A DNA stretch of 64,000 nucleotides, from the IMG/VR virus record IMGVR_UViG_3300046542_000227, positions 186,001-250,000 of that record, one strand, 5' to 3'. Shown one piece after another: positions 10,537 through 23,765 of the stretch. The translations under genes and the position numbers were made by a program. The notes below the pieces were generated by a model. It saw only the letters and a program-made list of their open reading frames with translations. It did not search any database and was not told the DNA's origin. How positions within the stretch are numbered: position 1 is the first letter of the stretch; each line of letters starts with the position of its first letter.

Positions 10537-12126
10537 ATGAGTTATTCCTTCGGCGAGAACACCCAGACCCGTGTCGAGCTGTTCATTATGGCACAGACTG
10601 GCACGTACCAAGAGCAAGCCATCCGCCCGTTCAAAACCAACTACACCGACCGTGTAGTGAACATGCTGTCCGAGGCAACGCGGCATGGTGATCGTCTTGG
10701 TGTCGCCGCAGTCAACGCAATCGCGGCTGACGTGATTCAACCTTCGGCTAACATCGAAGGCTTCGTGGGGATTCCAGAAGGTTGGGCCAGTCGACGGTTC
10801 CGCTTCCTGATGCGTGTGGTTGAACAACATCCATTCACCCCCAACGAAAAGACCATCCGGATCTTCTTCGGCTACAGTAACCACAGTGACGTTTCTCACG
10901 GCGGTCTGCTGGATCCTGAAACCCGGATCTACTTCAACTCCGAAACCACGATCCGCGACAAGCTGATCCCTGGCGTAAACGGCATGGTGCGTCAAGCCAA
11001 CGTAACTGCCGCCAACCAGATCATCACCCCGATGCGCATCATGAACGCCGGTCGTACTGGCGGGATTGACAGCACGCACATGATCCGTCCTGAGGACGTG
11101 TTCAACCTGCGTGAGACCAGCATCATCTCGGACATGGCTGCACAGAACATCGCTGGTGGCATTGACATGTCCTACGATACTCGTGCATTGGCTGGTGTGG
11201 GTAGCTTCCAACTCTCGCGTCGTCGTGACACATCGCCTACGCGCTATGTGGCTGACACCCTGGGTTCGTTGCAGCATGCGGTAAAAGAAAACAACATGTT
11301 GCAGCAAGGCTACTCGGGCAACAACTCGATGGGTCCTGCGGTGTTCTCCGAAGCGAGCGCATGCGCAGCTAACCATTCGATTGGTAGCGATCTGTTCTTG
11401 GCGAAGTTGCGTGATCACTGTTCCTACATGGAACGTGGCTTCGTAACCCTGCGTGATCTGATCGGCCTGTTCCCGGAAGTAGGTAACTTTGATCAGGTTA
11501 CCAAGTACGCACTGGATGATGGACGTGGCGTCCGTCAGGTTAGTTTCGCTGAGCAGAGTAACCACTGGCAAGGCGCAGACAAAACCTCCATCGCGGCATC
11601 GTTGATCGCTCAAGTAGTACCGGCGATCATGATGGACAACTTCATCCGTAACATTGCAATTGCGGTGACGAACTCCATGGTACCTGGGCAGTACGCAATG
11701 ACCATCAACGAGAAGTTGACTCGGTCGATTGTAGATGAGGTCAACATGACTCCGTACATCCAGGAATTCGAACGACGCTTCTGTGTAGATGCGTTGAACT
11801 CGATTACCTTCGGCGGCAATATCCCATTCCACATCACCGTGATGGGTGACTTGGCTGGTGATACCATCATCGACATCAGCCTCGATGGTGAGCAATCGGT
11901 TCGTTTCATCGCACCAACGTTTACCGACTCCCTGTTCTCACCGATGGTATCTACGCAGCTCGATGCTGCGAAAAAGGTATCGAACGACATGATCGCTATC
12001 GCCAGCGACGTGCTCGACCTCGGTCAGTCCGGTGTCAACTTCAACGTGGCGGCACCAATGCCAGTCACCATGGATCCTTCTTACTCTGGAGCAAGCGGTT
12101 ATGCAGAAAACTTTGGCCTTCTATAA
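10537..12126 (+). CDS. picA: PicA/Imp1 nuclear-import factor (phiKZ gp69-like)
   Basis: 529 aa; position between gp68-like and gp70-like genes; GGAG RBS. Confidence 0.68.
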   Translation: MSYSFGENTQTRVELFIMAQTGTYQEQAIRPFKTNYTDRVVNMLSEATRHGDRLGVAAVNAIAADVIQPSANIEGFVGIPEGWASRRFRFLMRVVEQHPFTPNEKTIRIFFGYSNHSDVSHGGLLDPETRIYFNSETTIRDKLIPGVNGMVRQANVTAANQIITPMRIMNAGRTGGIDSTHMIRPEDVFNLRETSIISDMAAQNIAGGIDMSYDTRALAGVGSFQLSRRRDTSPTRYVADTLGSLQHAVKENNMLQQGYSGNNSMGPAVFSEASACAANHSIGSDLFLAKLRDHCSYMERGFVTLRDLIGLFPEVGNFDQVTKYALDDGRGVRQVSFAEQSNHWQGADKTSIAASLIAQVVPAIMMDNFIRNIAIAVTNSMVPGQYAMTINEKLTRSIVDEVNMTPYIQEFERRFCVDALNSITFGGNIPFHITVMGDLAGDTIIDISLDGEQSVRFIAPTFTDSLFSPMVSTQLDAAKKVSNDMIAIASDVLDLGQSGVNFNVAAPMPVTMDPSYSGASGYAENFGLL

Positions 12127-13447
12127 AGACGTTCTTCATTCGATGCGTTACAGCTTCGATGACGAAGGTTTGATCAGCATCACCACGGCCACTGGCACCC
12201 CAGCTCCGGCAGAAGTCGAAGGCAAACGCTTGGTCCTGCCAAGCAATGCCTGGCTGAAGAAGGGTTTCGGTGACGCGTTCCAACCATTCCACCCGCTGTC
12301 GGAAACGATGGCGCGTCGTGGTACTTCGCCAGTGATGCAGCACATGCAGCGTAATGCTCGTGCACAGCTGGCGTTCACCTACATCTTCCTGGCCCAACAA
12401 CTGCTGCGTGTTGCAGCAGATCGTGAGCTGCACAAGGAGTTGCCAGTCACTGACGACTGTAATGACTTCTTGAAGAAGATGCAGTTGGCTGACGATAAGT
12501 TGGTCAAGCTGTTCGATCGACTGGTGCAAGCTGCCAGCGAGAAGAAACGTTTGATCACGGTCTACCTGAAGAATGGTGGCAACTACAACGGTAAGGCAGT
12601 CAATCGCCTGGCTGTGATCCGCTTCCCGCTGATCGAGTTGCTGGAAACTGAAGAGCCGAAAGTACTCGGCATCGAAGTGAAGCCAAAGCAGCGTCAGGTT
12701 CTGTTGACCCTGCTGCGCACCATCCTGCCGAACGGTGATGATCCTGAGCAGTACAGCGCAGGTTCGAACAACCGTGTTGCACCATACCTGCATGCATTCT
12801 TGCAAGCCTATCGCAAAACGATCGTTCAACTGAACAAGATCATTGCGCGCTACGGCCAACCAATGGCACTGCCGGTCAAGTCCTTCCCGGTCTACGACGA
12901 AGAGATCCTCGGCCAGTTCGGCGACATCTACGACGAGATCCCATCGCAAGATGGTAACGAAGGTGGTGTGGCTGAAGTAGACGACGAAGTGAAAGCTCCA
13001 GCGTCGATTGAAGTAGTGAAGGCACCAGGGTTGGCTGTACAGTCGGCTCCGGTATCGGCTCCACTGCGTCCAGCTGCGGCAGCGGCCAAGGTAGTTGAAG
13101 ACGACACCATCGACTTCGAAACCTTGAAGCAACACATGATGCAACCGCAGCAAGCGACCATGATGGGTTCTGGTTATCCTAATACCGTTGTCGGTATGGG
13201 CACTAACTACACTCAGCAAGGTCACGTGGTAATGCCGTGGCAGCAACAACCGCAACAAGCGCAAGCATTCAACCCGTTCGCGGGTGTAGCAGCATCGCGC
13301 ACAATGGAAACCAACATGCCTCTGTCCAGCCCTTACGGGATGGTCAACAACAACATGGGCATGGGTATGGGTTCCGGCATGGGTGTCACCACCATTAACA
13401 GTGGTGTAGGTTACGCACCGGGCGCTGTGGCTAACACACTGCTCTAA
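12101..13447 (+). CDS. Core protein (phiKZ gp70-like) with Met/Gly/Gln-rich C-tail
   Basis: GGAG RBS then ATG 12101; synteny. Confidence 0.7.
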   Translation: MQKTLAFYKDVLHSMRYSFDDEGLISITTATGTPAPAEVEGKRLVLPSNAWLKKGFGDAFQPFHPLSETMARRGTSPVMQHMQRNARAQLAFTYIFLAQQLLRVAADRELHKELPVTDDCNDFLKKMQLADDKLVKLFDRLVQAASEKKRLITVYLKNGGNYNGKAVNRLAVIRFPLIELLETEEPKVLGIEVKPKQRQVLLTLLRTILPNGDDPEQYSAGSNNRVAPYLHAFLQAYRKTIVQLNKIIARYGQPMALPVKSFPVYDEEILGQFGDIYDEIPSQDGNEGGVAEVDDEVKAPASIEVVKAPGLAVQSAPVSAPLRPAAAAAKVVEDDTIDFETLKQHMMQPQQATMMGSGYPNTVVGMGTNYTQQGHVVMPWQQQPQQAQAFNPFAGVAASRTMETNMPLSSPYGMVNNNMGMGMGSGMGVTTINSGVGYAPGAVANTLL

Positions 13448-13921: not shown

Positions 13922-16030
13922 ATGCGTGAAATCGATCCAACCCTATTGGGTCAACTTGCTACCGATCCATTCTTCGGTACAGTAAGTGCTGCGCGTGCCG
14001 CGATGTATGCTTCCCACATCGGTCAAGCACCGATCATGGAAGACAACGAGCCACGACGAACCATGACGGGTGTCGAACCCCACTACGCAGACCACACCTT
14101 CGACATTCGGTTCCCAGTCGATGCGACAATCCTGCACGTGATCCGGAAATACCCTCCGGGCACTGGCATGGGTGCTGATGCTATTCGGCATAACCCGTTG
14201 ACCACGATCATCTACGAGGACTATTACTGCCCCCGCAAAACCATCGGGGTGATTCAGGTGCCTGAGTATCTCAGCATGCACCAAGACTTCGGTTATCCAC
14301 TGGTTCGTAATGAACAGTTGTGGGATCGGGTTGTGAAAGAAGCCAACATCGGTAAAGGTGAAGTGCTTTGCCATTCCAGTGCTGTAAAGAACAATGGTCT
14401 CTACGGTACCGGTATCTCCGCAGAAGTCGTGTTCCTTTCAGTACCTGGCGGTATTGAAGACGGCTTCGATTACTCGACCGAGTTCTTGGAGCGCATGGCA
14501 CCTACTACCTACGGCAAGTTCATCGGTAGTGCTGGGCAGAAGTCGATCTTGCTGAACCTGTATGGTGATGACAAGATCTACAAACCGTTCCCAGATGTGG
14601 GTGAGCAAGTCCGTGCTGACGGCATCATCATGGCGATGCGGGATATCGATGAGAACTTGGCGCCAGCGGAAATGACCGCACGGGCACTGCGTACTGTCGA
14701 TCTGGCATTCGACCGTTGCATCTACGGCAAGCCTCGTTCTACTGTTAAGGACGTGGTGGTGTATCGTGACAGTCGGGTGTTTCCATCCAACGTACCAATT
14801 GGCATGGACACGCAGCTGAACAAGTACTACCAAGCTGGTTGCCGTTACTACCGTCAGCTGATGGACATCTACGATGGCTTGCGTAAGCGTCGTGGTAAGA
14901 AGCTGCATATCACTGAAGAGCTCAACCAGCTCTTGGTGGAAGCGCAGATCTATCTGCCGACTCCAGATTCCGTGCGTAAGCTGACGCGTATGCACCGTCT
15001 GGAAGTGCTTGACGAATACCGCGTTGAGATCACCACCGAAAACAAGATGATCCCAGACATGGGGTTCAAGGCAACAGACTGTGTCGGTGGTAAAGGTGTG
15101 GTCTGCCGGACTCGCCCTGCGCATGAAATGCCGATGACTAAACATGGCGTTCGTGCAGACGTGGTGATCTACGGTGGTTCGACGATTCGTCGTTCTAACT
15201 TCGGTCGGTTCTACGAGCAGTACTACAACGCAGCATCGCGTGACTTGTTGTTCCGTCTGCGTACTCAATGTGGCCTGTTGCCACAAGTACGTCCTACCCG
15301 TCATCAACTGCAGGAAGTAGCAAAGAACCGGGCGTTGGTACATGACGTGTTTGATACACTGCGTCGTTACTTCGCATTGTGGGCACCGATCCATAACGAA
15401 CTGTTGGAGCCGGATGCGGCTAACCCAACTGAATACGTGCTGTCGGTACTGGAGGATGGACAACACAAGAACCCAGGTATCACAGTAAACATTCCGGTAG
15501 ATAACCCGGTGGACATTCTGGACACGATCCGTCAGATCGAAGCCAGTGAGTTCAAACCACTGTACGACACCGTGACGTATACGGACAATGCCGGTAACGT
15601 GGTTGAAACAGATTGCAAGGTTCTTTGCGGTGCGCTGCAAATGTTCCTGCTGGAAAAGATCGGCGAAGACTGGTCGGGTGTAGCTTCGGCGAAGACCCAG
15701 CAGTTTGGTCTGCCTGCGAAGATGGGTAGTGGTGATGCTAACCGTACACCGGGGCGAGAGAACCCGATGCGATCGGCTGGTGAATCCGAAACCCGTTCCT
15801 ACGTGGCAACCATCGGCAGTTGGGCAACCAACGAGTTGTTGGATCAAACCAACAACCCAATGTCTCACCGTGCTGTGATCCGTTCGATCCTGCAAGCGGA
15901 TGAGCCAACCAACATCGATGTCGCTGTACCGCGTGATCAAGTCCCATACGGGGGCAGTCGCCCAGTGCAGTTGATGAACCACCTGTTGGAATGCCGCGGC
16001 GTTCGATTCATTTATACGCCTGATCATTGA
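13922..16030 (+). CDS. rpoB: nvRNAP beta subunit, C-terminal part (phiKZ gp71-73-like), uninterrupted
   Basis: Motifs RAAMYASH, IEDG, FKATDCVGGKGVV, RRSNFGR, RSAGESETR. Confidence 0.92.
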   Translation: MREIDPTLLGQLATDPFFGTVSAARAAMYASHIGQAPIMEDNEPRRTMTGVEPHYADHTFDIRFPVDATILHVIRKYPPGTGMGADAIRHNPLTTIIYEDYYCPRKTIGVIQVPEYLSMHQDFGYPLVRNEQLWDRVVKEANIGKGEVLCHSSAVKNNGLYGTGISAEVVFLSVPGGIEDGFDYSTEFLERMAPTTYGKFIGSAGQKSILLNLYGDDKIYKPFPDVGEQVRADGIIMAMRDIDENLAPAEMTARALRTVDLAFDRCIYGKPRSTVKDVVVYRDSRVFPSNVPIGMDTQLNKYYQAGCRYYRQLMDIYDGLRKRRGKKLHITEELNQLLVEAQIYLPTPDSVRKLTRMHRLEVLDEYRVEITTENKMIPDMGFKATDCVGGKGVVCRTRPAHEMPMTKHGVRADVVIYGGSTIRRSNFGRFYEQYYNAASRDLLFRLRTQCGLLPQVRPTRHQLQEVAKNRALVHDVFDTLRRYFALWAPIHNELLEPDAANPTEYVLSVLEDGQHKNPGITVNIPVDNPVDILDTIRQIEASEFKPLYDTVTYTDNAGNVVETDCKVLCGALQMFLLEKIGEDWSGVASAKTQQFGLPAKMGSGDANRTPGRENPMRSAGESETRSYVATIGSWATNELLDQTNNPMSHRAVIRSILQADEPTNIDVAVPRDQVPYGGSRPVQLMNHLLECRGVRFIYTPDH

Positions 16031-16062
16031 TCGGGCTTTACCTAACTAGACGGAGTTAAGCC

Positions 16063-18039
16063 ATGGGTTGTTTTGCCGCCCGAGATCTCTTGGCCATGTC
16101 AGAAGATGATCTCTGGAAGATCCCCCAAGACGAATACCACGAACTGATCCTAGCGGACGGTAAGGTGGACATCGTAGGGGCGGATCTGATCAACACGGTC
16201 TACCTCTGGTACCCAATGCTCGATTACCCGCAGGCACCAATCCTGACGTCGTACGTGCATGGCACCGATATGGAGTTCACCAGCGGCTCCAATCTGCGTG
16301 TATTGAAGACCCTGTTGTGGGGTGTTCATGCTCACTACGATGAACGGGTAGATCCTGAGTTGTTGGCGCTGGCCGCCATGCGTACGATGAACCGTTGGTA
16401 TAACGTGATCACCATCCGCTGCTCCTCCAAGGTAGCGACGATGTCGATCTTGGATGTGTTGGAGGTCATGGACCATCCTGACATTAAACAAGCCAACGCC
16501 ACGGTGGAAGGAAACCGTCACTCGATCGAGGAAGTAACGTACAAGACGATTGAGCGTGTGCTCAAATCGCGGGATGATCTGCCACTGAACCCGATCGCCA
16601 TGGGCATCCGTTGCGGTACCCAGAAGATCGACCAGGTCAAGCAGTGCTTCGGTCCACGTGGTTATGTAACCGACATCAACTCCGACATCTTTGAAGAGCC
16701 GGTGCTGAAAGGTTATGTAGAAGGTATCTGGGATCTGTATGGATCCATGATCGAATCTCGATCCGGTACCAAGGCTCTGGCGTACAACAAAGAGCTGCTG
16801 CGTAACACCGAGTACTTCAACCGGAAGACCCAGCTGATTGCACAGTACGTGCGTGGGCTGGCAGAAGGTGATTGCGGTACACCTCACTTCCAAGAGGTGC
16901 CTGTCATTAAGGCACTGCTCAAGCAACTGGCTGGCAAGTACTACCTGAACGAAAAGACTGGTGCACTGGATTGGATACGCGGTGATGAGGAACACCTCAT
17001 CGGCACGACCATCAAGATGCGTGGGGTTATGACCTGCGTACATCCGGGTGCTGGTATTATCTGTTCGGTTTGCTATGGTCGTCTGTCGTACAGCGTGCCA
17101 CGACACACCAACATCGGTCAGGTCTCCGCAGTACAAGTTGGTGACAAGATTACCTCCAACGTGTTGTCGACTAAACACACCGACGTAACGTCGCGTGTCG
17201 ATCGTCTGCAGCTGTCCAAGGTTGAAGGTGATTACCTGCGTTACGGTAAACAGGAAGAGGCGCTGTATCTGCGTCAGGAACTGAACAACAAAGCCGTGCG
17301 TATGGTCATCGACAAGAACGAAGCTACGAACCTTGCAGACATCCTGATGTTGAAGGACCTGTCGGGTTACCCTGTCACCAACGCTACTGAGCTCAGCCAG
17401 ATCCACGTTCAAGTGGAAACGGCAGAAGGCACAGTGTCGGACATCCTCACGGTCTCGCTGTATAACCGTAAGTCCAGTCTGACCATCGAAGTGTTGGAAT
17501 ACCTGCGCAAGCATAAGTGGGAATACGACAGCCGTGGCAACCTGATCATCGACCTGTCAAACTTCGACACCACCAAGCCAATCCTGATCCTGCCGAATAA
17601 ACATGTCAACATGTACGAAGTAATGAAGCGTATTCGTTCCTTCTTGCACAGTGGCAGCGACGACGGCGCGAAATCGAAGTTGGATCCTCTGGAATATTCG
17701 GGCAAGATCTACCTGAAGAACTTCAAAGATCCGACCACTGGGTTGCTGGTGTTCACGAACATGCTCAACGAGAAACTGAAGATCAACATCGTTCATTGCG
17801 AGATCCTGGTTTACGCTATGATGGTGAGATCTGCCGTGCATCGCGATTACCGGTTGCCAAAGCCGGGTATCGATGGTGTGTTCGAGAAGTACAATCGTCT
17901 GATGTTGAACCGCAGCCTGTCGGGTGCCATGGCATTCGAGAAGCAGCATGAACCATTCAACAACCCAGCGTGCTACTTGACGCTGGAGCGTGACGATCAC
18001 CCGTATGACCACGTCCTGTTGGGCGGGAAGATGAACTGA
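16063..18039 (+). CDS. rpoC: nvRNAP beta' subunit, C-terminal part (phiKZ gp74-like)
   Basis: SRSG...EYFNRK bridge helix, DCGT, C...ICSVCYG Zn site, LSTKH trigger loop. Confidence 0.92.
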   Translation: MGCFAARDLLAMSEDDLWKIPQDEYHELILADGKVDIVGADLINTVYLWYPMLDYPQAPILTSYVHGTDMEFTSGSNLRVLKTLLWGVHAHYDERVDPELLALAAMRTMNRWYNVITIRCSSKVATMSILDVLEVMDHPDIKQANATVEGNRHSIEEVTYKTIERVLKSRDDLPLNPIAMGIRCGTQKIDQVKQCFGPRGYVTDINSDIFEEPVLKGYVEGIWDLYGSMIESRSGTKALAYNKELLRNTEYFNRKTQLIAQYVRGLAEGDCGTPHFQEVPVIKALLKQLAGKYYLNEKTGALDWIRGDEEHLIGTTIKMRGVMTCVHPGAGIICSVCYGRLSYSVPRHTNIGQVSAVQVGDKITSNVLSTKHTDVTSRVDRLQLSKVEGDYLRYGKQEEALYLRQELNNKAVRMVIDKNEATNLADILMLKDLSGYPVTNATELSQIHVQVETAEGTVSDILTVSLYNRKSSLTIEVLEYLRKHKWEYDSRGNLIIDLSNFDTTKPILILPNKHVNMYEVMKRIRSFLHSGSDDGAKSKLDPLEYSGKIYLKNFKDPTTGLLVFTNMLNEKLKINIVHCEILVYAMMVRSAVHRDYRLPKPGIDGVFEKYNRLMLNRSLSGAMAFEKQHEPFNNPACYLTLERDDHPYDHVLLGGKMN

Positions 18040-18044
18040 CGGCT

Positions 18045-18122
18045 GTGGACTCCGTCCACGGTTAGTCACCTAATGTGGACGGAGGTAGTGTGGGGAGCTT
18101 CGGCTCCCCATGCCTTTAAAAA
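18045..18122 (+). promoter_or_regulatory. Structured leader/RBS switch of helicase gene
   Basis: CTCCGTCCAC/GTGGACGGAG stem covering GGAG of GGAGGT, alternative GTGGAC/GTCCAC stem, second UUCG hairpin between SD and ATG. Confidence 0.5.
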
Positions 18123-19637
18123 ATGTCAGTCAGCCTTAAGATCGAGAAGTACTCCCACGGCTGCCGTGTGACTGGGTTCGACGTGGATAGCCTCCATAAG
18201 ACCACACGGTTCTTGGAATCCCTCTCACTGAAGGAACCCCAACGCGTTCAGAACCGCATGACCATGGTGCTTAAGAAAAAGTACTACGGCATGACGGAGA
18301 ACAAGCGCGAGCTATTTATCCACCGCAACTCGTTACCTGAATACGTCAACCATCTGAGCGAGTCGGGGTATCCAACCGCAAAGATCGTCTACAACCAAAT
18401 CCCTGTACCACCTGCTGCCAACGCCGATTACCTAATCGACGAGAAGTATCAGTTGCGGGATTACCAAATTCCTATCGTGGGCGAACTGTCTGACGATACT
18501 TACTCACGTCGCCTTGACCTACAAACAGGTAAGGGCAAAACGTTCACCACCCTCGCTGCTGTAGCGCGGATGGGTTGCCGGGCTGTTGTAATGATTCCGC
18601 CTAAGTATTTCGGGATCTGGAAGACAGCGCTGGATGAAACCTACGGTGACTCTGCGAAGTTCCGACTCGTCTCGGGCTCCGGAGAGCTCAAGCAGCTAAT
18701 CCTAGATGGATTGGATGGCAATATACACGAAGAGGTCTTAATCGTCTCCTGTGTGTCCTACAGGGGCTACATCGAGGCCTATGAGACCTACGGCGAGAAC
18801 ATTGAGTCTTCGGGCTATCCGGTTCCGCCACCGCGCTTCCATGAAGCGGTAGGTGCTGGTGTACAGATCAACGATGAGTTCCAAGAAGACCCGGGTCTGT
18901 ACTTCCGGATTGACGTGTACTCTAACGTCAAGAAAATGATCTACTTGTCTGCTACACCATACACAGGTAACGCTTACGTTACCCGCATGATCGATGTGAT
19001 GACTCCTGCAGAAACCCGTTGCACCTTGCCGGAGTGGGATCGTTACATTGATGTGGTGTGGTTGCTGTATAGCGATCCAACGGTGCAAGCCAAGGATTAC
19101 CTCACCCCTTTCAAGAACACCTACAACCATGCCCGTTATGAAACGAAGCTGCTTGAGAAGAAGAAGCGCCTTGAGTTCTACTTGGCCTACGTCCGTCGTA
19201 TGGTCGAAGGTCTCTTCGTCCGCGATCGTCAAGTCGGTCAAAAGGCGTTGGTCCTCTGTTCCACGGTTAAGTTCATTCATGTCCTAACGGACTTCCTCAA
19301 ACAGCAGTTCCCGGATCTGAGCATTGGGTTCCACGTTGCAGGTTGTGACTACAAGAAACTGGTGACGTACGACATAATCGTCTCTACGCCTAAGTCTTGC
19401 GGTACTGGGGTAGACATCCCAAACCTGCGTGAAACCTTCCTGTGCGTGGCTACAGGCTCTGAGAAGGACGCTGTGCAGATCATGGGTCGTACTCGTCCGC
19501 TGAAAGGCTGGCCTGAGCATACCCCACGACTGAACGTGCTGGTGTGTAACAACATCCCCCAACATCTACGCTACATGGATGGTAACAAAGAGGTCTTCTC
19601 CAAGAAGGCACGTTACCAGCGCATGGCTCGACTTTAA
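18123..19637 (+). CDS. Superfamily 2 (UvsW/Rad25-like) helicase (phiKZ gp75-like)
   Basis: LRDYQ, TGKGKT, DEFQ, SATP, GTGVDIPNL, QIMGRTR. Confidence 0.92.
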   Translation: MSVSLKIEKYSHGCRVTGFDVDSLHKTTRFLESLSLKEPQRVQNRMTMVLKKKYYGMTENKRELFIHRNSLPEYVNHLSESGYPTAKIVYNQIPVPPAANADYLIDEKYQLRDYQIPIVGELSDDTYSRRLDLQTGKGKTFTTLAAVARMGCRAVVMIPPKYFGIWKTALDETYGDSAKFRLVSGSGELKQLILDGLDGNIHEEVLIVSCVSYRGYIEAYETYGENIESSGYPVPPPRFHEAVGAGVQINDEFQEDPGLYFRIDVYSNVKKMIYLSATPYTGNAYVTRMIDVMTPAETRCTLPEWDRYIDVVWLLYSDPTVQAKDYLTPFKNTYNHARYETKLLEKKKRLEFYLAYVRRMVEGLFVRDRQVGQKALVLCSTVKFIHVLTDFLKQQFPDLSIGFHVAGCDYKKLVTYDIIVSTPKSCGTGVDIPNLRETFLCVATGSEKDAVQIMGRTRPLKGWPEHTPRLNVLVCNNIPQHLRYMDGNKEVFSKKARYQRMARL

Positions 19638-19643
19638 CTAACT

Positions 19644-19680
19644 GCATAGCGCCTCCCCATATGGGGAGGTGACTATGTCG
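19644..19680 (+). terminator. Hairpin of repeated family
   Basis: GCATAG-GCCTCCCC-ATAT-GGGGAGGT-CTATGTCG. Confidence 0.65.
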
Positions 19681-19693
19681 CATCGGAGCTTAC

Positions 19694-20245
19694 ATGAAAG
19701 AAGAGAATTGGATTGAAAAGTCGTTTGTTATCTACTTCAAATACTATCTGGAGAACGGTCGAACGCAACGGGCCCTGACGATATTCGGGGTACCCCTGCT
19801 GATCGGTGCTGAAATGCCATATGTCTGGCATTCGGGCTTTATGCTGTCTTTGTATAACTTCATCTATCTCAAAGATGTCGAACCGAAGACCGTGTCACAG
19901 GCACTGAAACAGCACAGGACGGTCCCTCTGCTGAGCTGGCTTCTGGGTAACCATGTGGAAAAGGAAGAACCCTTCGAGGGATCTGCCTACAACACCACAG
20001 TTCGGGGTATTCGTTACACAATCACCCGCCATGGTAGATGGACCTCGTATGAGCGGTTCCAATGGCTCGCCCTTAAAGGCAGCCGTATGGACGTATACAG
20101 CATCGCCAGCGATGAGGATAAACAGATACCGGAATTTACCTTTGCACCACCGGAATGGGCTGACCGCACGCCTTCCCCTGAAGAGGTGGTAAACGTAGCG
20201 CATGAGATGTACAAGCTCACTGATTTCAGCCAACTCAACGAGTAA
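19694..20245 (+). CDS. Hypothetical protein
   Basis: GGAG RBS, 183 aa. Confidence 0.7.
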   Translation: MKEENWIEKSFVIYFKYYLENGRTQRALTIFGVPLLIGAEMPYVWHSGFMLSLYNFIYLKDVEPKTVSQALKQHRTVPLLSWLLGNHVEKEEPFEGSAYNTTVRGIRYTITRHGRWTSYERFQWLALKGSRMDVYSIASDEDKQIPEFTFAPPEWADRTPSPEEVVNVAHEMYKLTDFSQLNE

Positions 20246-20258
20246 ATAAGGAAGACCG

Positions 20259-20729
20259 ATGAATACTGAACAACTCCAGACCATCCAAACCGCGCTCGAT
20301 GAGCATACCCGTGAAACTGGACATCGTTACCGTCTGGGTTCCACCCAAGTCAACCACGAGGTGCTGGGTGAACATTATTTCTACGTCGAGCGTCGGGTGA
20401 ACTCCCTGACCCAACCTCATGTTCGTGAGATGTTCGGCGAGTGGATGAACTTCTTTGAGGTGGCCATTAGCCCCAAGAAGATCTGGCCCAAAGAGCGTAA
20501 AGATCTGAACACGCGCATCGAGCCCGATGCCATCCTCCACCTGCTGTACACGTCGTCAGTAATACACGAGCGGGGGATTATCAAGACTTGGCTTGATGTC
20601 ATGGCTGAACTGGGTTACGCGATTTATGCCGTCGACATCCGTGGGCAAGATGATCACATCACTGCCGACATCATTGTCTCTAACCGTACGCTGGTGTACC
20701 AAGCCGCCATCACTATCAACACTAAGTAA
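20259..20729 (+). CDS. Hypothetical protein
   Basis: TAAGGA RBS, 156 aa. Confidence 0.72.
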   Translation: MNTEQLQTIQTALDEHTRETGHRYRLGSTQVNHEVLGEHYFYVERRVNSLTQPHVREMFGEWMNFFEVAISPKKIWPKERKDLNTRIEPDAILHLLYTSSVIHERGIIKTWLDVMAELGYAIYAVDIRGQDDHITADIIVSNRTLVYQAAITINTK

Positions 20730-20740
20730 GGAGCAACACC

Positions 20741-21016
20741 ATGGACCAATCCGTAAAGCTGGATCCTATTGTACTGGGTTCGTCGGTACCAAATCCGTTC
20801 TTCCGCGGTGTTTCACCTAACCGTACTTTGATGTATACCGAACACCTGAAGCTGCGTGAGCGTGAGATGGCAGCAGGTCACGAACAGCTGGGTCATCTGC
20901 CCTTCAAGGCTACCGACCAACACGGTGCTCGTGGTGTAGTAGTAGAAATCAAGGATCCTAAAAGGATTCCTAACTTCCGCCTGTCTGATATCCCCGGTGC
21001 GCCGAAAAGCGTCTGA
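20741..21016 (+). CDS. 91-aa miniature paralogue of nvRNAP beta subunit
   Basis: TAAGGAG RBS; two ungapped blocks match ORF 13922-16030 (13/31 and 10/26 identical). Confidence 0.75.
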   Translation: MDQSVKLDPIVLGSSVPNPFFRGVSPNRTLMYTEHLKLREREMAAGHEQLGHLPFKATDQHGARGVVVEIKDPKRIPNFRLSDIPGAPKSV

Positions 21017-21057
21017 CGACATAAAGCCCCTCCCATCGCGGGAGGGGCCTATGCCGC
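21017..21057. repeat. Conserved ~40-bp palindromic element at convergent junction (copy 1)
   Basis: CGACATAAAGCCCCTCCC-loop-GGGAGGGGCCTATGCCGC. Confidence 0.85.
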
Positions 21058-21068
21058 TTTTTCTTTTG

Positions 21069-21587: not shown

Positions 21588-23236
21588 AAAAACTCCGCCA
21601 GTGGATCGACAGTGATCAGGTTCTCGAAACGCTCTTTGAACTTGGTCGCTGCAGGCGTGTTACAGACCGGGCAGTTGAAGGAGTTGATTGCAGTCATGGC
21701 AATCAGGCTGTCGTCGATATACTTCTCGACAGCGTCGTTGAATTCTTTGATGTGCTCATCGGCCGAGTAAACGTCAGACAGGATGTCAGCGATGAAGTCC
21801 TTCTCTTCCGAGAGAACCACGTAGCCATCTGGCGCTTCTGGGTTGATGTCAACAATGGCTTTGATCCAGTGCGTGTATTCACGCGCAGCGGTGGACTCAG
21901 CCAGTTGTTCGATAAAGCGAGTACGGTTACGACCTTCAGGCGGTTCGTTGAATGCGCCTTGAGTCATTTCGATGATGCCGGTCAACCAAGCACGTCCGAG
22001 CTCTTCGTGATCCCAGACCGACGGGCATTGCAACAGGAAGCCCATCTCGCCAATCTGCACCAGACGCTCACGACCATAGACGTGATGCGACTTGTACGTG
22101 GCCAGGTCTTCCTTGGTACGCGGTGCACGCGCATCGATACGGAAGGCCATATGGGTTTTCTGCCATGGAGTCAGACCGTTCATGTCGACCCACCACATGT
22201 TCACCACTTGCATCAGTTCTTTGGTGATATGGTTGCACTTGCCGATATCGGCGATGCATGGCGACGCGTACGGATAACCGGCTGGGTACAGAGTAGCAGC
22301 CAGACCCAGGATTACCGCAGGGATGTCACGGGTGTCGATCAATGGCTTGAGGTCAGTCGGCGTAGCAAACGAAACGTTCGCATTGCTGACGTGCTGCAAA
22401 GCAAAGTCAACCACGATGGTCTTGATGTAGTGGGCGACGTTAGAGAACGCCAGACCACGGGTTTCAGAACCTACCGATACTTTGACCTGTGCCACTTCCT
22501 GGTTCATCGCGGTCAGTTCAACCAACGATGGGGCCTTGAAGCGCAGCCAGATACCCGAATGCCACAATGGCATATCAACGGTACCACCAACGCCCGCCTT
22601 ACGGGTGACGTAGGACTTCAGCTCTTCACGGGTGTACTTGCCATCAGCAGCCAGACGCTGGACAGGAATACCACCACCGATGTGCTTGCCTTCGTGTTCA
22701 ACCGTTTGACCCCAGTGCGAACCTTCACGATGCAAGGCAGCAGTGTGACGGTCTGGATCGTTAACGATCTGACGGGACAATGCACCGAGCAGCAGACGCA
22801 GGTGAGGATCACCTTTGTCGTCCGGGATAAAGTCGGCAGTACGACCGATGGCTTCAGCCAGTTTGGTTTCGGATGTAATCATCCGTTCCATAATAGCCGA
22901 GCTGTGGTTCAGCACCTGGGTAACCGTTTCAACCGTTTCACGCAGGATCGCGACGCAGTCACTCAGGCTAGGCTCAGGCTGCTTATCAGGCAGTGGTTTG
23001 GTAACCGGGCGGGTAACCGTATGGTTAGTGCCGGGTTGATCTGGCGTGAAGGGCTCCAGAGGAGGCAACTCTTCGTCAGGAGCATCCTGGATCAACTGCT
23101 GCACTTCAGCCTCACCAAGCGGTGGTGTGGCGATGTGTGGGTTGATCGGTGTTTCACCAGACGGCACAGCAGCGCCGGCAGCTGCCGGCTCCACTGCGTC
23201 GCCCTGACCGGCTTTCGGATCATCAGGCAGTTGCAT
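21551..23236 (-). CDS. Core protein (phiKZ gp77-like); T4 gp26/gpG-like tail-baseplate assembly chaperone
   Basis: 561 aa; two Cys pairs (C-x6-C, CPVC) and terminal ...AEFF, an architecture like gp26-type chaperones. Confidence 0.6.
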   Translation of the reverse strand: MQLPDDPKAGQGDAVEPAAAGAAVPSGETPINPHIATPPLGEAEVQQLIQDAPDEELPPLEPFTPDQPGTNHTVTRPVTKPLPDKQPEPSLSDCVAILRETVETVTQVLNHSSAIMERMITSETKLAEAIGRTADFIPDDKGDPHLRLLLGALSRQIVNDPDRHTAALHREGSHWGQTVEHEGKHIGGGIPVQRLAADGKYTREELKSYVTRKAGVGGTVDMPLWHSGIWLRFKAPSLVELTAMNQEVAQVKVSVGSETRGLAFSNVAHYIKTIVVDFALQHVSNANVSFATPTDLKPLIDTRDIPAVILGLAATLYPAGYPYASPCIADIGKCNHITKELMQVVNMWWVDMNGLTPWQKTHMAFRIDARAPRTKEDLATYKSHHVYGRERLVQIGEMGFLLQCPSVWDHEELGRAWLTGIIEMTQGAFNEPPEGRNRTRFIEQLAESTAAREYTHWIKAIVDINPEAPDGYVVLSEEKDFIADILSDVYSADEHIKEFNDAVEKYIDDSLIAMTAINSFNCPVCNTPAATKFKERFENLITVDPLAEFFMLASRKLSRIM

Positions 23237-23765
23237 TGAGTTCGCTCTCCAGGATGCTGGTGTATTCTTTCTCTACGGTTTCAGCCAGCGAAACCAGCAG
23301 TGGCTGAATGCCGGATTCGTAGTGGGTAGCCAGCTTGTTGTAGCCGGTAGCCAGATCGAATACATCGGTGATCTCTTCAGCGCTTGGAGCACCCGACTTG
23401 TCTTTGTGGACTTCCCACAGCGACGCGAGGTTCTCGTTGTAGTTGGCGATATCGCCGCACAGCGTACCGAAGCTACGCTTGAAGCCTTCGGCGTCAGCCA
23501 AGTGCTTGCAGATGTTCGGCAGTTCTTGTTTGACCGGGATGACGAAGTTGCTGGTGCTGAGGATCAGACCGGCACACTCGCTGTACAGTTCGCGAAGGAT
23601 GTCGTAGCCATCGGCGCCCTTGAGTACAGCTTCAGCGGTGAGGCTTTGCATGTCCTGGACTTGGCCAACGATTTCTTTTTGTTCGGTCGCCGGCAGAGTT
23701 GCGAAGGCTTCCAGTTTCTTTTGTTCCGGCACAGCAATGGCGCTACCGGCGATCAGCTCACTCAT
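23223..23765 (-). CDS. Hypothetical helical protein
   Basis: AGGAG RBS, 180 aa, good codon bias. Confidence 0.75.
   Translation of the reverse strand: MSELIAGSAIAVPEQKKLEAFATLPATEQKEIVGQVQDMQSLTAEAVLKGADGYDILRELYSECAGLILSTSNFVIPVKQELPNICKHLADAEGFKRSFGTLCGDIANYNENLASLWEVHKDKSGAPSAEEITDVFDLATGYNKLATHYESGIQPLLVSLAETVEKEYTSILESELNATA

What the first reader, a model, noticed from the sequence alone, without database searches (positions are those of the whole stretch)
20741..21016. A 91-aa 'mini-beta': two RNAP active-centre motifs joined into one small gene
Seen: residues KLDPIVLGSSVPNPFFRGVSPNRTLMYTEHL align without gaps to residues 3-33 of the nvRNAP beta subunit at 13922 (EIDPTLLGQLATDPFFGTVSAARAAMYASHI; 13/31 identical). 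HLPFKATDQHGARGVVVEIKDPKRIP aligns to its residues ~379-404 (DMGFKATDCVGGKGVVCRTRPAHEMP; 10/26 identical). About 345 intervening residues are replaced by a ~15-aa linker. The gene has a strong TAAGGAG RBS and an intact frame. Known: these blocks correspond to the bacterial beta NRALMGxNMQRQ and GDKxxGRHGNKG motifs that line the active centre. Inference: keeping just these two distant blocks suggests selection rather than decay. It could be a decoy subunit, assembly factor or inhibitor that blocks assembly of an RNAP (own nvRNAP, virion RNAP or that of a co-infecting jumbo phage). I know of no description of such a protein.
Basis: partly seen in the sequence, partly recalled or inferred. Interest (0 to 1): 0.88.

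Follow-up and report, generated by a model that had tools for sequence, protein, structure and literature searches.

The report
RNA-polymerase-derived mini-protein of jumbo phages
A 91-residue gene in this nucleus-forming jumbo phage belongs to a previously undescribed, evolutionarily conserved family of tiny proteins built from two active-centre pieces of the phage's own RNA polymerase plus a conserved tail, and it most likely works by mimicking that polymerase subunit, although its function is untested.

Summary
ORF 20741-21016 (91 aa) matches the window's nvRNAP betaC subunit (13922-16030) in two collinear blocks, by BLASTP, HMM and profile-profile tests. It is not a decaying relic. Synonymous sites are saturated while dN is about 0.2-0.4, and indels are in frame. 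Block 2 plus the tail is the invariant core: four lineages keep only that part, and Noxifer-type phages put block 1 and block 2 on two adjacent proteins. The betaC-invariant catalytic-loop lysine is never lysine in the family. AlphaFold finds no autonomous fold. The gene closes the nvRNAP betaC/beta'C/helicase gene block, in a mosaic accessory region with a recombination breakpoint inside the gene. Both blocks coincide with known intron/homing-endonuclease hot spots of chimallivirus RNAP genes, probably because these are the most conserved segments. No Pfam, PHROG or literature description was found. My best guess, unproven, is a non-catalytic betaC mimic that binds partners of betaC during cytoplasmic polymerase assembly.

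The parts
20727..20733 (+). Shine-Dalgarno-like TAAGGAG; its TAA is the stop codon of the upstream 156-aa ORF
   Evidence: Read directly from the sequence. The same TAAGGAG/TAAGGAA is conserved in L023 and L007.
20741..21016 (+). Mini-beta ORF, 91 aa including the stop codon
   Evidence: It belongs to a family of about 13 distinct small chimallivirus proteins.
20756..20848 (+). Block 1 (residues 6-36), homologous to betaC residues 3-33, the N-terminal NRALMG-type segment with the invariant Arg and Met
   Evidence: (13/31 identical, E 1e-6), (probability 92.5 %).
20850..20882 (+). In-frame 33-nt insertion in the linker, specific to the window and absent from L023 and L007
20900..20971 (+). Block 2 (residues 54-77), homologous to betaC 381-404 (the FK.TD..GGKGV loop, bacterial GDK..GRHGNKG). 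The betaC-invariant Lys is Arg here.
   Evidence: (probability 95.9 %).
20972..21013 (+). Family-specific C-terminal tail NFRLSDIPGAPKSV. It is the most conserved segment of the family and has no significant counterpart in betaC.
   Evidence: It is the only region with AF2 pLDDT of about 80.
21017..21067 (+). Intrinsic-terminator-like hairpin (core stem 21026-21048) followed by a U-run. It closes the co-directional gene block.
   Evidence: dG -24.7 kcal/mol, z -4.5. Conserved in Noxifer, L023 and L007.
13922..16030 (+). Parent-type gene: nvRNAP betaC subunit (orthologue of phiKZ gp71-73), uninterrupted here. Block 1 lies at 13928-14020 and block 2 at 15062-15133.
16063..19637 (+). The next two genes of the same co-directional block: the nvRNAP beta'C-like subunit (16063-18039) and an SF2 helicase (18123-19637)
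   Evidence: synteny with Noxifer gp066/gp067 and phiKZ gp74/gp75.
19694..20729 (+). Two accessory ORFs (183 aa and 156 aa) that precede the mini-ORF in all group-A genomes. No family annotation.

Best explanation
The ORF encodes a real accessory microprotein that is under selection. Shown here: it descends from a copy of the nvRNAP betaC gene, keeping the gene's first ~35 codons (block 1) and the ~25 codons around the catalytic-loop motif (block 2). It has lost the ~345 codons between them and everything downstream, and it carries a conserved C-terminal tail (IPxFKLSDIPG). It belongs to a family found in several chimallivirus lineages, evolves under purifying selection, recombines as modules, has replaced the betaC-invariant lysine, and has no predicted fold of its own. 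Inferred: it is translated in the cytoplasm together with the nvRNAP subunits and acts as a non-catalytic mimic of the betaC active-centre surface. It would fold only on a partner that normally receives these segments, most plausibly the beta'-like subunits during cytoplasmic pre-import assembly, with the tail adding affinity. The result would be a block or a modulation of polymerase assembly. Its sporadic, mosaic distribution fits a conflict or competition gene better than a core assembly factor.
For: Homology to betaC in two collinear blocks. Weak tblastn hits of family members fall inside RNAP beta genes of other phages. Family and architecture. Every context is a chimallivirus genome (chimallin, PhiKZ_MCP, RNAP genes). 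Selection: dN 0.18-0.42 against dS from 0.6 to saturated, an in-frame 33-nt indel, and a conserved RBS and terminator. Non-catalytic: betaC K391 is invariant in 34/34 sequences but is R, C or M in 13/13 minis. Disorder: AF2 pLDDT 58.7 and 55.3, pTM 0.25 and 0.18. Co-directional block with betaC, beta'C and helicase, with no convincing internal terminator. Accessory and mosaic: only Noxifer among 50,697 phage records has a member. The close relative L023 has 97-99 % identical core genes but a 58 % identical mini, with a breakpoint inside the gene. Noxifer-type phages split the blocks onto gp070 and gp071, each with a tail. nvRNAP subunits depend on each other for import, which implies cytoplasmic assembly (bioRxiv 10.64898/2026.09.21.753271).
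Against: There is no direct evidence of expression or of binding to any RNAP subunit. Complex prediction was not possible with these tools. The best conserved element (the tail) is not detectably RNAP-derived, so the real function may lie there. Four lineages keep only block 2 plus the tail, so the two-block mimic is not essential to the family. In groups B and C the gene is not next to RNAP genes. In the assembled enzyme these betaC segments are parts of a larger domain, so an isolated peptide may not reproduce their contacts.
Confidence: 0.4

Rival explanations
1. It is an exapted peptide whose function is unrelated to RNA polymerase. The conserved C-terminal motif (IPxFKLSDIPG), together with block 2, would be a short linear motif that binds some other phage or host partner, such as the nuclear shell or import machinery or a host factor. 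The betaC ancestry would then be only historical.
For: The tail is the most conserved part and the only region with AF2 pLDDT of about 80. Forms with only block 2 plus the tail exist in four lineages. Groups B and C are not linked to RNAP genes. The tail occurs nowhere else in the loci examined.
Against: Residues kept in blocks 1 and 2 are those conserved in betaC (R, M, K, T, G, GV). That pattern suggests the original contacts still matter. In group A the gene is linked to the nvRNAP genes.
Confidence: 0.2
2. It regulates or chaperones the phage's own nvRNAP. As a placeholder it would occupy the beta' active-centre face until betaC joins, or it would time the switch between polymerases, rather than act as a weapon.
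For: In group A it is co-directional with betaC, beta'C and the helicase and closes the block. nvRNAP appears to assemble before import.
Against: It is absent from most chimalliviruses, including phiKZ and PhiPA3, so it cannot be a general assembly requirement. It lies in a hypervariable, mosaic region.
Confidence: 0.15
3. It is a pseudosubstrate or decoy, in the manner of the poxvirus K3L mimic of eIF2alpha. It would soak up a host defence or a rival-phage factor that recognises or modifies the exposed active-centre segments of unassembled betaC.
For: It is a small viral copy of part of a larger protein. The FK.TD lysine is retained and a similar FKLSD motif is repeated in the tail. Its distribution is accessory and fast-evolving.
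Against: No factor that targets betaC protein is known, and there is no supporting evidence here. The repeat similarity is weak (E 0.016, probability 3 %).
Confidence: 0.1
4. It is a neutral relic of a duplicated betaC gene after an internal deletion, and the ORF is open only by chance.
For: It has no Pfam or PHROG family of its own and no predicted fold. It is annotated only as hypothetical in Noxifer.
Against: The same architecture is kept open in at least 8 distinct sequences from different lineages whose synonymous sites are saturated. The indel is in frame, and the RBS and terminator are conserved.
Confidence: 0.04
5. It is a DNA-level element tied to homing endonucleases: a decoy target, an intron landing pad or a repair template that carries the two RNAP sites attacked by intron-encoded HNH enzymes.
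For: Block 2 spans the recurrent intron insertion site GG|KGV of betaC. The block-1 equivalent is the insertion site of the PhiPA3 gp210 intron in the vRNAP beta gene (PMC11620839).
Against: Nucleotide identity to the window's own betaC is only 48/93 and 34/72, with no blastn hit. Family members differ at most synonymous sites, so conservation is at the protein level. There is no intron RNA or endonuclease domain nearby. The coincidence is expected anyway, because these are the most conserved beta segments.
Confidence: 0.03

Closest known systems
nvRNAP betaC subunit of Chimalliviridae (phiKZ gp71-73; PDB 7OGP chain C)
   Same: Blocks 1 and 2 are homologous to betaC residues ~2-42 and ~382-407, in the same order and starting at the same N-terminal position.
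   Different: It is 91 aa against about 700. It lacks ~345 internal residues and the whole C-terminal half, gives no Pfam Rpb2_6 hit, has the invariant loop lysine replaced, carries an extra family-specific tail, and has no predicted fold.
Noxifer gp070 (192 aa) and gp071 (41 aa), both annotated as hypothetical proteins
   Same: They occupy the same genomic slot. gp071 is block 2 plus the tail and is 60 % identical. gp070 has a block-1-like N-terminus and a tail-like C-terminus.
   Different: In Noxifer-type phages the two blocks sit on two adjacent proteins, and gp070 has about 150 unrelated residues in between. The window has a single fused 91-aa protein.
microProteins and dominant-negative mimics (plant LITTLE ZIPPER, Id proteins) and viral pseudosubstrate mimics such as poxvirus K3L; comparison from my own knowledge
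   Same: It is a small protein derived from part of a larger one, keeping interaction segments but not catalytic capacity.
   Different: No binding or dominant-negative activity has been shown. The retained pieces are two non-contiguous active-centre segments, not one folded interaction domain.
Small phage proteins that bind RNA polymerase (T7 Gp2, T4 AsiA, Xp10 P7); comparison from my own knowledge
   Same: It is a small phage-encoded protein that plausibly targets a multisubunit RNAP.
   Different: Those proteins are unrelated in sequence to RNAP subunits and act on the host enzyme. This one is derived from a phage RNAP subunit.
Group I introns with HNH endonucleases in chimallivirus RNAP beta genes (phiKZ gp72; PhiPA3 gp210, PMC11620839)
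   Same: They target the same two conserved beta segments that the mini-protein retains.
   Different: The mini-gene has no intron RNA, no endonuclease domain and no nucleotide-level similarity to the target sites.

Membership tests
Multisubunit RNAP beta subunit (Pfam RNA_pol_Rpb2_6, hybrid-binding/DPBB domain) | Significant sequence homology to conserved beta segments | tested here: met
   Family profile against 7OGP_C, E 8.5e-10. hhalign gives 95.9 % and 92.5 %.
Multisubunit RNAP beta subunit (Pfam RNA_pol_Rpb2_6, hybrid-binding/DPBB domain) | A complete domain that reaches the Pfam gathering score | tested here: not met
   No Pfam hit even at E <= 1. Only about 55 of the domain's 373 profile positions are represented.
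Multisubunit RNAP beta subunit (Pfam RNA_pol_Rpb2_6, hybrid-binding/DPBB domain) | The universally conserved lysine of the G-x-K-G catalytic loop | tested here: not met
   K391 is invariant in 34/34 betaC sequences. The position is R, C or M in 13/13 family members, and R in the window.
Multisubunit RNAP beta subunit (Pfam RNA_pol_Rpb2_6, hybrid-binding/DPBB domain) | An autonomously folded double-psi beta-barrel | tested here: not met
   AF2 gives pLDDT 58.7 and 55.3 with no strands. This is a prediction from a shallow alignment only.
Core nvRNAP subunit set of Chimalliviridae | Presence in all family members | tested here: not met
   Only Noxifer among 50,697 phage records has it. It is absent from the syntenic phiKZ and PhiPA3 loci.
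microProtein / dominant-negative mimic | Small protein derived from a larger multidomain protein | tested here: met
microProtein / dominant-negative mimic | Binds the partners of the parent protein and forms non-productive complexes | not testable with these tools
   This needs complex prediction or biochemistry.
Pseudogene / decaying remnant | Frame disruption, no conservation of the ORF, dN/dS near 1 | tested here: not met
   The frame is intact in all members, dN is well below dS, and the indel is in frame.
Homing endonuclease / group I intron element | An HNH, GIY-YIG or LAGLIDADG domain, or an intron RNA | tested here: not met
   No such Pfam or PHROG hit. No Rfam family in the window.

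The most novel reading that the evidence does not exclude
The mini-beta family is a protein-level weapon of inter-phage competition. Subunits of co-infecting chimalliviruses are translated in the shared cytoplasm before import, so a non-catalytic betaC mimic could poison assembly of a rival's nvRNAP while the producer's own, co-evolved enzyme resists. This would be the protein counterpart of the intron-endonuclease attacks on the same RNAP motifs.
Probability: 0.15. Interest if true: 0.85.

Novelty: new variant of a known kind. Interest (0 to 1): 0.62.

Why it matters
Nucleus-forming jumbo phages run their whole transcription programme on split, phage-encoded multisubunit RNA polymerases. How these enzymes are assembled, imported and regulated is only now being worked out. 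A conserved microprotein made from two active-centre segments of one subunit would be a natural probe of the assembly interfaces. It could also be a new type of polymerase regulator or inhibitor, and an example of a virus evolving a fragment mimic of its own enzyme. The family also shows modular evolution: fusion, splitting into two genes, internal duplication and recombination inside an 80-aa gene. And it links the RNAP motifs retained in the mini-protein with the sites targeted by mobile introns in phage-phage competition. Noxifer and P. fluorescens SBW25 offer a tractable laboratory system for testing all of this.

Tried and rejected
1. The large hits of the exhaustive search (P0004, P0006, P0007, P0011) are cadherin/Big_9 repeat proteins whose weak repeat matches add up. 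They are spurious.

2. The idea that the two blocks form a minimal double-psi beta-barrel was rejected. Too little of the domain is present, and AF2 predicts no strands.

3. The idea that the tail is the next beta motif (bacterial NPLGVPSRMN, phage GGSTIRRMN) with a loop deleted is not supported. hhalign ends at the IP/MP position. The tail alone matches best, and only weakly, to the start of block 2.

4. The repair-template or decoy-site idea for homing endonucleases was rejected for lack of nucleotide similarity.

5. The extra 90-aa and 89-aa ORFs in L019/L020 and L023 are not family members.

6. Neighbour genes gave no Pfam or PHROG annotation.

7. Megablast of the locus against phages found nothing.

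8. Fold searches were not run because both models were of low confidence.

Full report
**What is there**

The window is part of a 267-kb IMG/VR contig from a chimallivirus whose closest cultured relative is Pseudomonas phage Noxifer (betaC 85 % identical). On the + strand, a co-directional block runs from 13922 to 21016. It holds the following genes:
- nvRNAP betaC (702 aa, orthologue of phiKZ gp71-73; 4e-237 to PDB 7OGP chain C)
- the beta'C-like subunit (658 aa)
- an SF2 helicase (504 aa)
- two unannotated ORFs (183 and 156 aa)
- the 91-aa ORF at 20741-21016

The 91-aa ORF has a TAAGGAG 7 nt upstream of its ATG. It is followed directly by a strong hairpin and U-run (dG -24.7 kcal/mol, z -4.5). 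That hairpin is conserved in Noxifer, L023 and L007. A convergent gene lies beyond it.

- BLASTP of the 91-aa protein against betaC reproduces both blocks: 13/31 identical (E 1e-6) and 11/36 identical (E 8e-4).
- A profile of the small-protein family hits phiKZ gp71-73 in the PDB at E 8.5e-10. Block 1 falls on residues 2-42 and block 2 on 382-407.
- hhalign against a 107-sequence betaC profile gives 92.5 % and 95.9 % probability.
- A betaC profile aligns positions 368-440 with E. coli beta ~1050-1120, so block 2 is the GDK..GRHGNKG loop.
- The equivalence of block 1 with the NRALMG motif was not shown directly here. It rests on its position at the start of the C-terminal half and on published alignments.

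**It is a family, not a relic**

An exhaustive phmmer search of 1.84 billion representatives found six small relatives, and a profile search added more. The close relative L023 added another.

| Form | Members |
|---|---|
| Block 1 + block 2 + tail | window (91 aa), L023 (80), P0002 (80), P0005 (76), P0012 (93), P0009 and P0013 (100), P0003 (124, with an internal duplication of half of block 1) |
| Block 2 + tail only | P0008/Noxifer gp071 (41), P0014 (42), P0010 (51), P0015 (56) |
| Longer forms | P0016 (201), the gp070-like proteins of Noxifer-type phages (192) |

The four large hits were repeat-protein artefacts.

All genomic contexts are chimallivirus genomes (chimallin, PhiKZ major capsid protein, RNAP genes). 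There are three different settings:
- **Group A:** downstream of the nvRNAP and helicase genes (window, L007, L023-25, Noxifer, L019/20).
- **Group B:** a different small-gene cassette (L008-L014, L021/22).
- **Group C:** near chimallin (L015-18).

Among 50,697 phage records only Noxifer has a member. The other weak tblastn hits fall inside RNAP beta genes, which independently confirms the ancestry. Pfam and PHROGs have no such family, and I found no description in the literature.

**Selection and evolution**

- Between lineages, synonymous sites are saturated or nearly so (dS from 0.6 to infinite), while dN is 0.18-0.42 for block 2 plus the tail and 0.36-0.86 for block 1.
- The window differs from its relatives by an in-frame 33-nt insertion in the linker, at 20850-20882.
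- There is no nucleotide-level similarity to the window's own betaC gene. So the paralogy is old and there has been no recent gene conversion.
- L023 has core genes 97-99 % identical to the window's, but its mini-protein is only 58 % identical. The 5' half of its gene is 96 % identical to L007 and 62 % to the window, while the 3' half is 88 % identical to the window. So a recombination breakpoint lies inside the gene, near the junction of the two blocks.
- In Noxifer-type phages the blocks are on two adjacent proteins, each ending in the tail motif. This looks like duplication followed by subfunctionalisation.

**Anatomy**

- The most conserved part is block 2 plus a C-terminal tail, IPxFKLSDIPG followed by 4-6 mostly basic residues.
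- The tail has no significant counterpart in betaC. Its best match, which is weak, is the start of block 2 itself (FKLSDIPG against FKLTD.HG; E 0.016), so it may be a short internal repeat.
- The residues kept in the blocks are those conserved in betaC (Arg and Met of block 1; Lys, Thr, Gly and Gly-Val of block 2).
- There is one systematic exception. The betaC-invariant loop lysine (34/34 sequences) is Arg, Cys or Met in all 13 family members.
- AlphaFold2 with the family alignment finds no fold, either for the window protein (pLDDT 58.7) or for the compact 80-aa form (pLDDT 55.3). Only the tail reaches about 80.

**Link to mobile introns**

The phiKZ betaC gene is split by the gp72 HNH intron exactly inside block 2: exon 1 ends in FKMTDFHGG. 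Thirteen of the 120 listed betaC homologues are exon-1-only proteins ending at the same GG, and one of them is 83 % identical to the window's betaC. In PhiPA3, the gp210 HNH intron sits in the vRNAP beta gene just after the conserved DD that precedes the NRALMG-type motif, which is the equivalent of block 1. That endonuclease is used in competition against phiKZ (PMC11620839).

So both retained blocks are intron and endonuclease hot spots. I think this reflects a common cause, since they are the most conserved beta segments. The mini-gene shows protein-level conservation, not DNA-level conservation, and there is no intron RNA or endonuclease nearby.

**Mechanism**

What is shown is ancestry, conservation, selection, loss of the catalytic lysine, predicted disorder, the operon position in group A, and accessory, mosaic evolution.

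What is inferred is the mode of action. The protein is made in the cytoplasm, where nvRNAP subunits appear to assemble before import. There it could mimic the active-centre face of betaC, bind a partner of betaC (most plausibly the beta'-like subunits), and so block or modulate assembly. Its sporadic, fast-recombining distribution fits a conflict gene (a competitor poison or a decoy) better than a core assembly factor.

Rival explanations are a tail-centred function unrelated to RNAP, a regulator of the phage's own polymerase, a pseudosubstrate decoy, a neutral relic (contradicted by the evidence), and a DNA-level homing element (contradicted by the evidence). No binding or expression data exist, so confidence in the mechanism is moderate to low, about 0.4.

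**Verdict**

This is a real, selected and previously undescribed family of betaC-derived microproteins in a subset of chimalliviruses. The proposed function is plausible but untested.

Noticed in passing
window 13922-16030 (block 2 at 15062-15133); L005 8983-12303; proteins P0043, P0067, P0073, P0085 and others: The betaC gene is interrupted at the same codon boundary (GG|KGV) in many chimalliviruses. phiKZ has a 1.2-kb intron with an HNH gene, while SL2, PA7 and PhiPA3 have insertions of about 290-420 bp. Thirteen exon-1-only proteins appear among the 120 listed homologues, and one is 83 % identical to the window's uninterrupted gene.
   Followed up: partly
window 19694-21016 compared with L023 15722-17624: Core genes (betaC, beta'C, helicase) are 97-99 % identical between the window phage and L023. 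The ORFs after the helicase are only 58-81 % identical, and L023 has two extra ORFs (80 and 89 aa). This is a mosaic accessory tail of the operon.
   Followed up: partly
L001 8410-9123 (Noxifer gp070/gp071); L019 and L020 7413-8129: A conserved pair: a 192-aa protein with a block-1-like N-terminus and a tail-like C-terminus, followed by a 41-42-aa protein that is block 2 plus the tail. The ~150-residue middle of gp070 matches nothing.
   Followed up: partly
L008 134-508 (P0003): This 124-aa member contains a second partial copy of block 1 (INPFHACIPGVRGAMF) between block 1 and block 2, which is an internal duplication.
   Followed up: no
L019 7132-7404, L020 7132-7404, L023 17101-17370: A small ORF family of 89-90 aa, ending in ..NYDHT.Y, is inserted just upstream of the mini-beta or gp070 genes in some group-A genomes. 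It is absent from the window and from Noxifer.
   Followed up: no
window 14438-16027 (-), 12065-13264 (-), 21752-23239 (+): Very long ORFs (399-529 aa) run antisense to the evident genes. They are probably a by-product of codon and GC bias rather than genes.
   Followed up: no
window 12032-13447 (+): A 471-aa ORF upstream of the RNAP block has a Gln/Met/Gly/Asn-rich, low-complexity C-terminal third. Its function is unknown, and by synteny it corresponds to Noxifer gp063.
   Followed up: no
L021/L022 8001-8606 (P0016): This 201-aa group-B protein carries a good block 2 but a degenerate tail (VSLGDILRKL) and only a vestige of block 1 (ILGAGG). It may be a fusion with the upstream cassette gene.
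   Followed up: no
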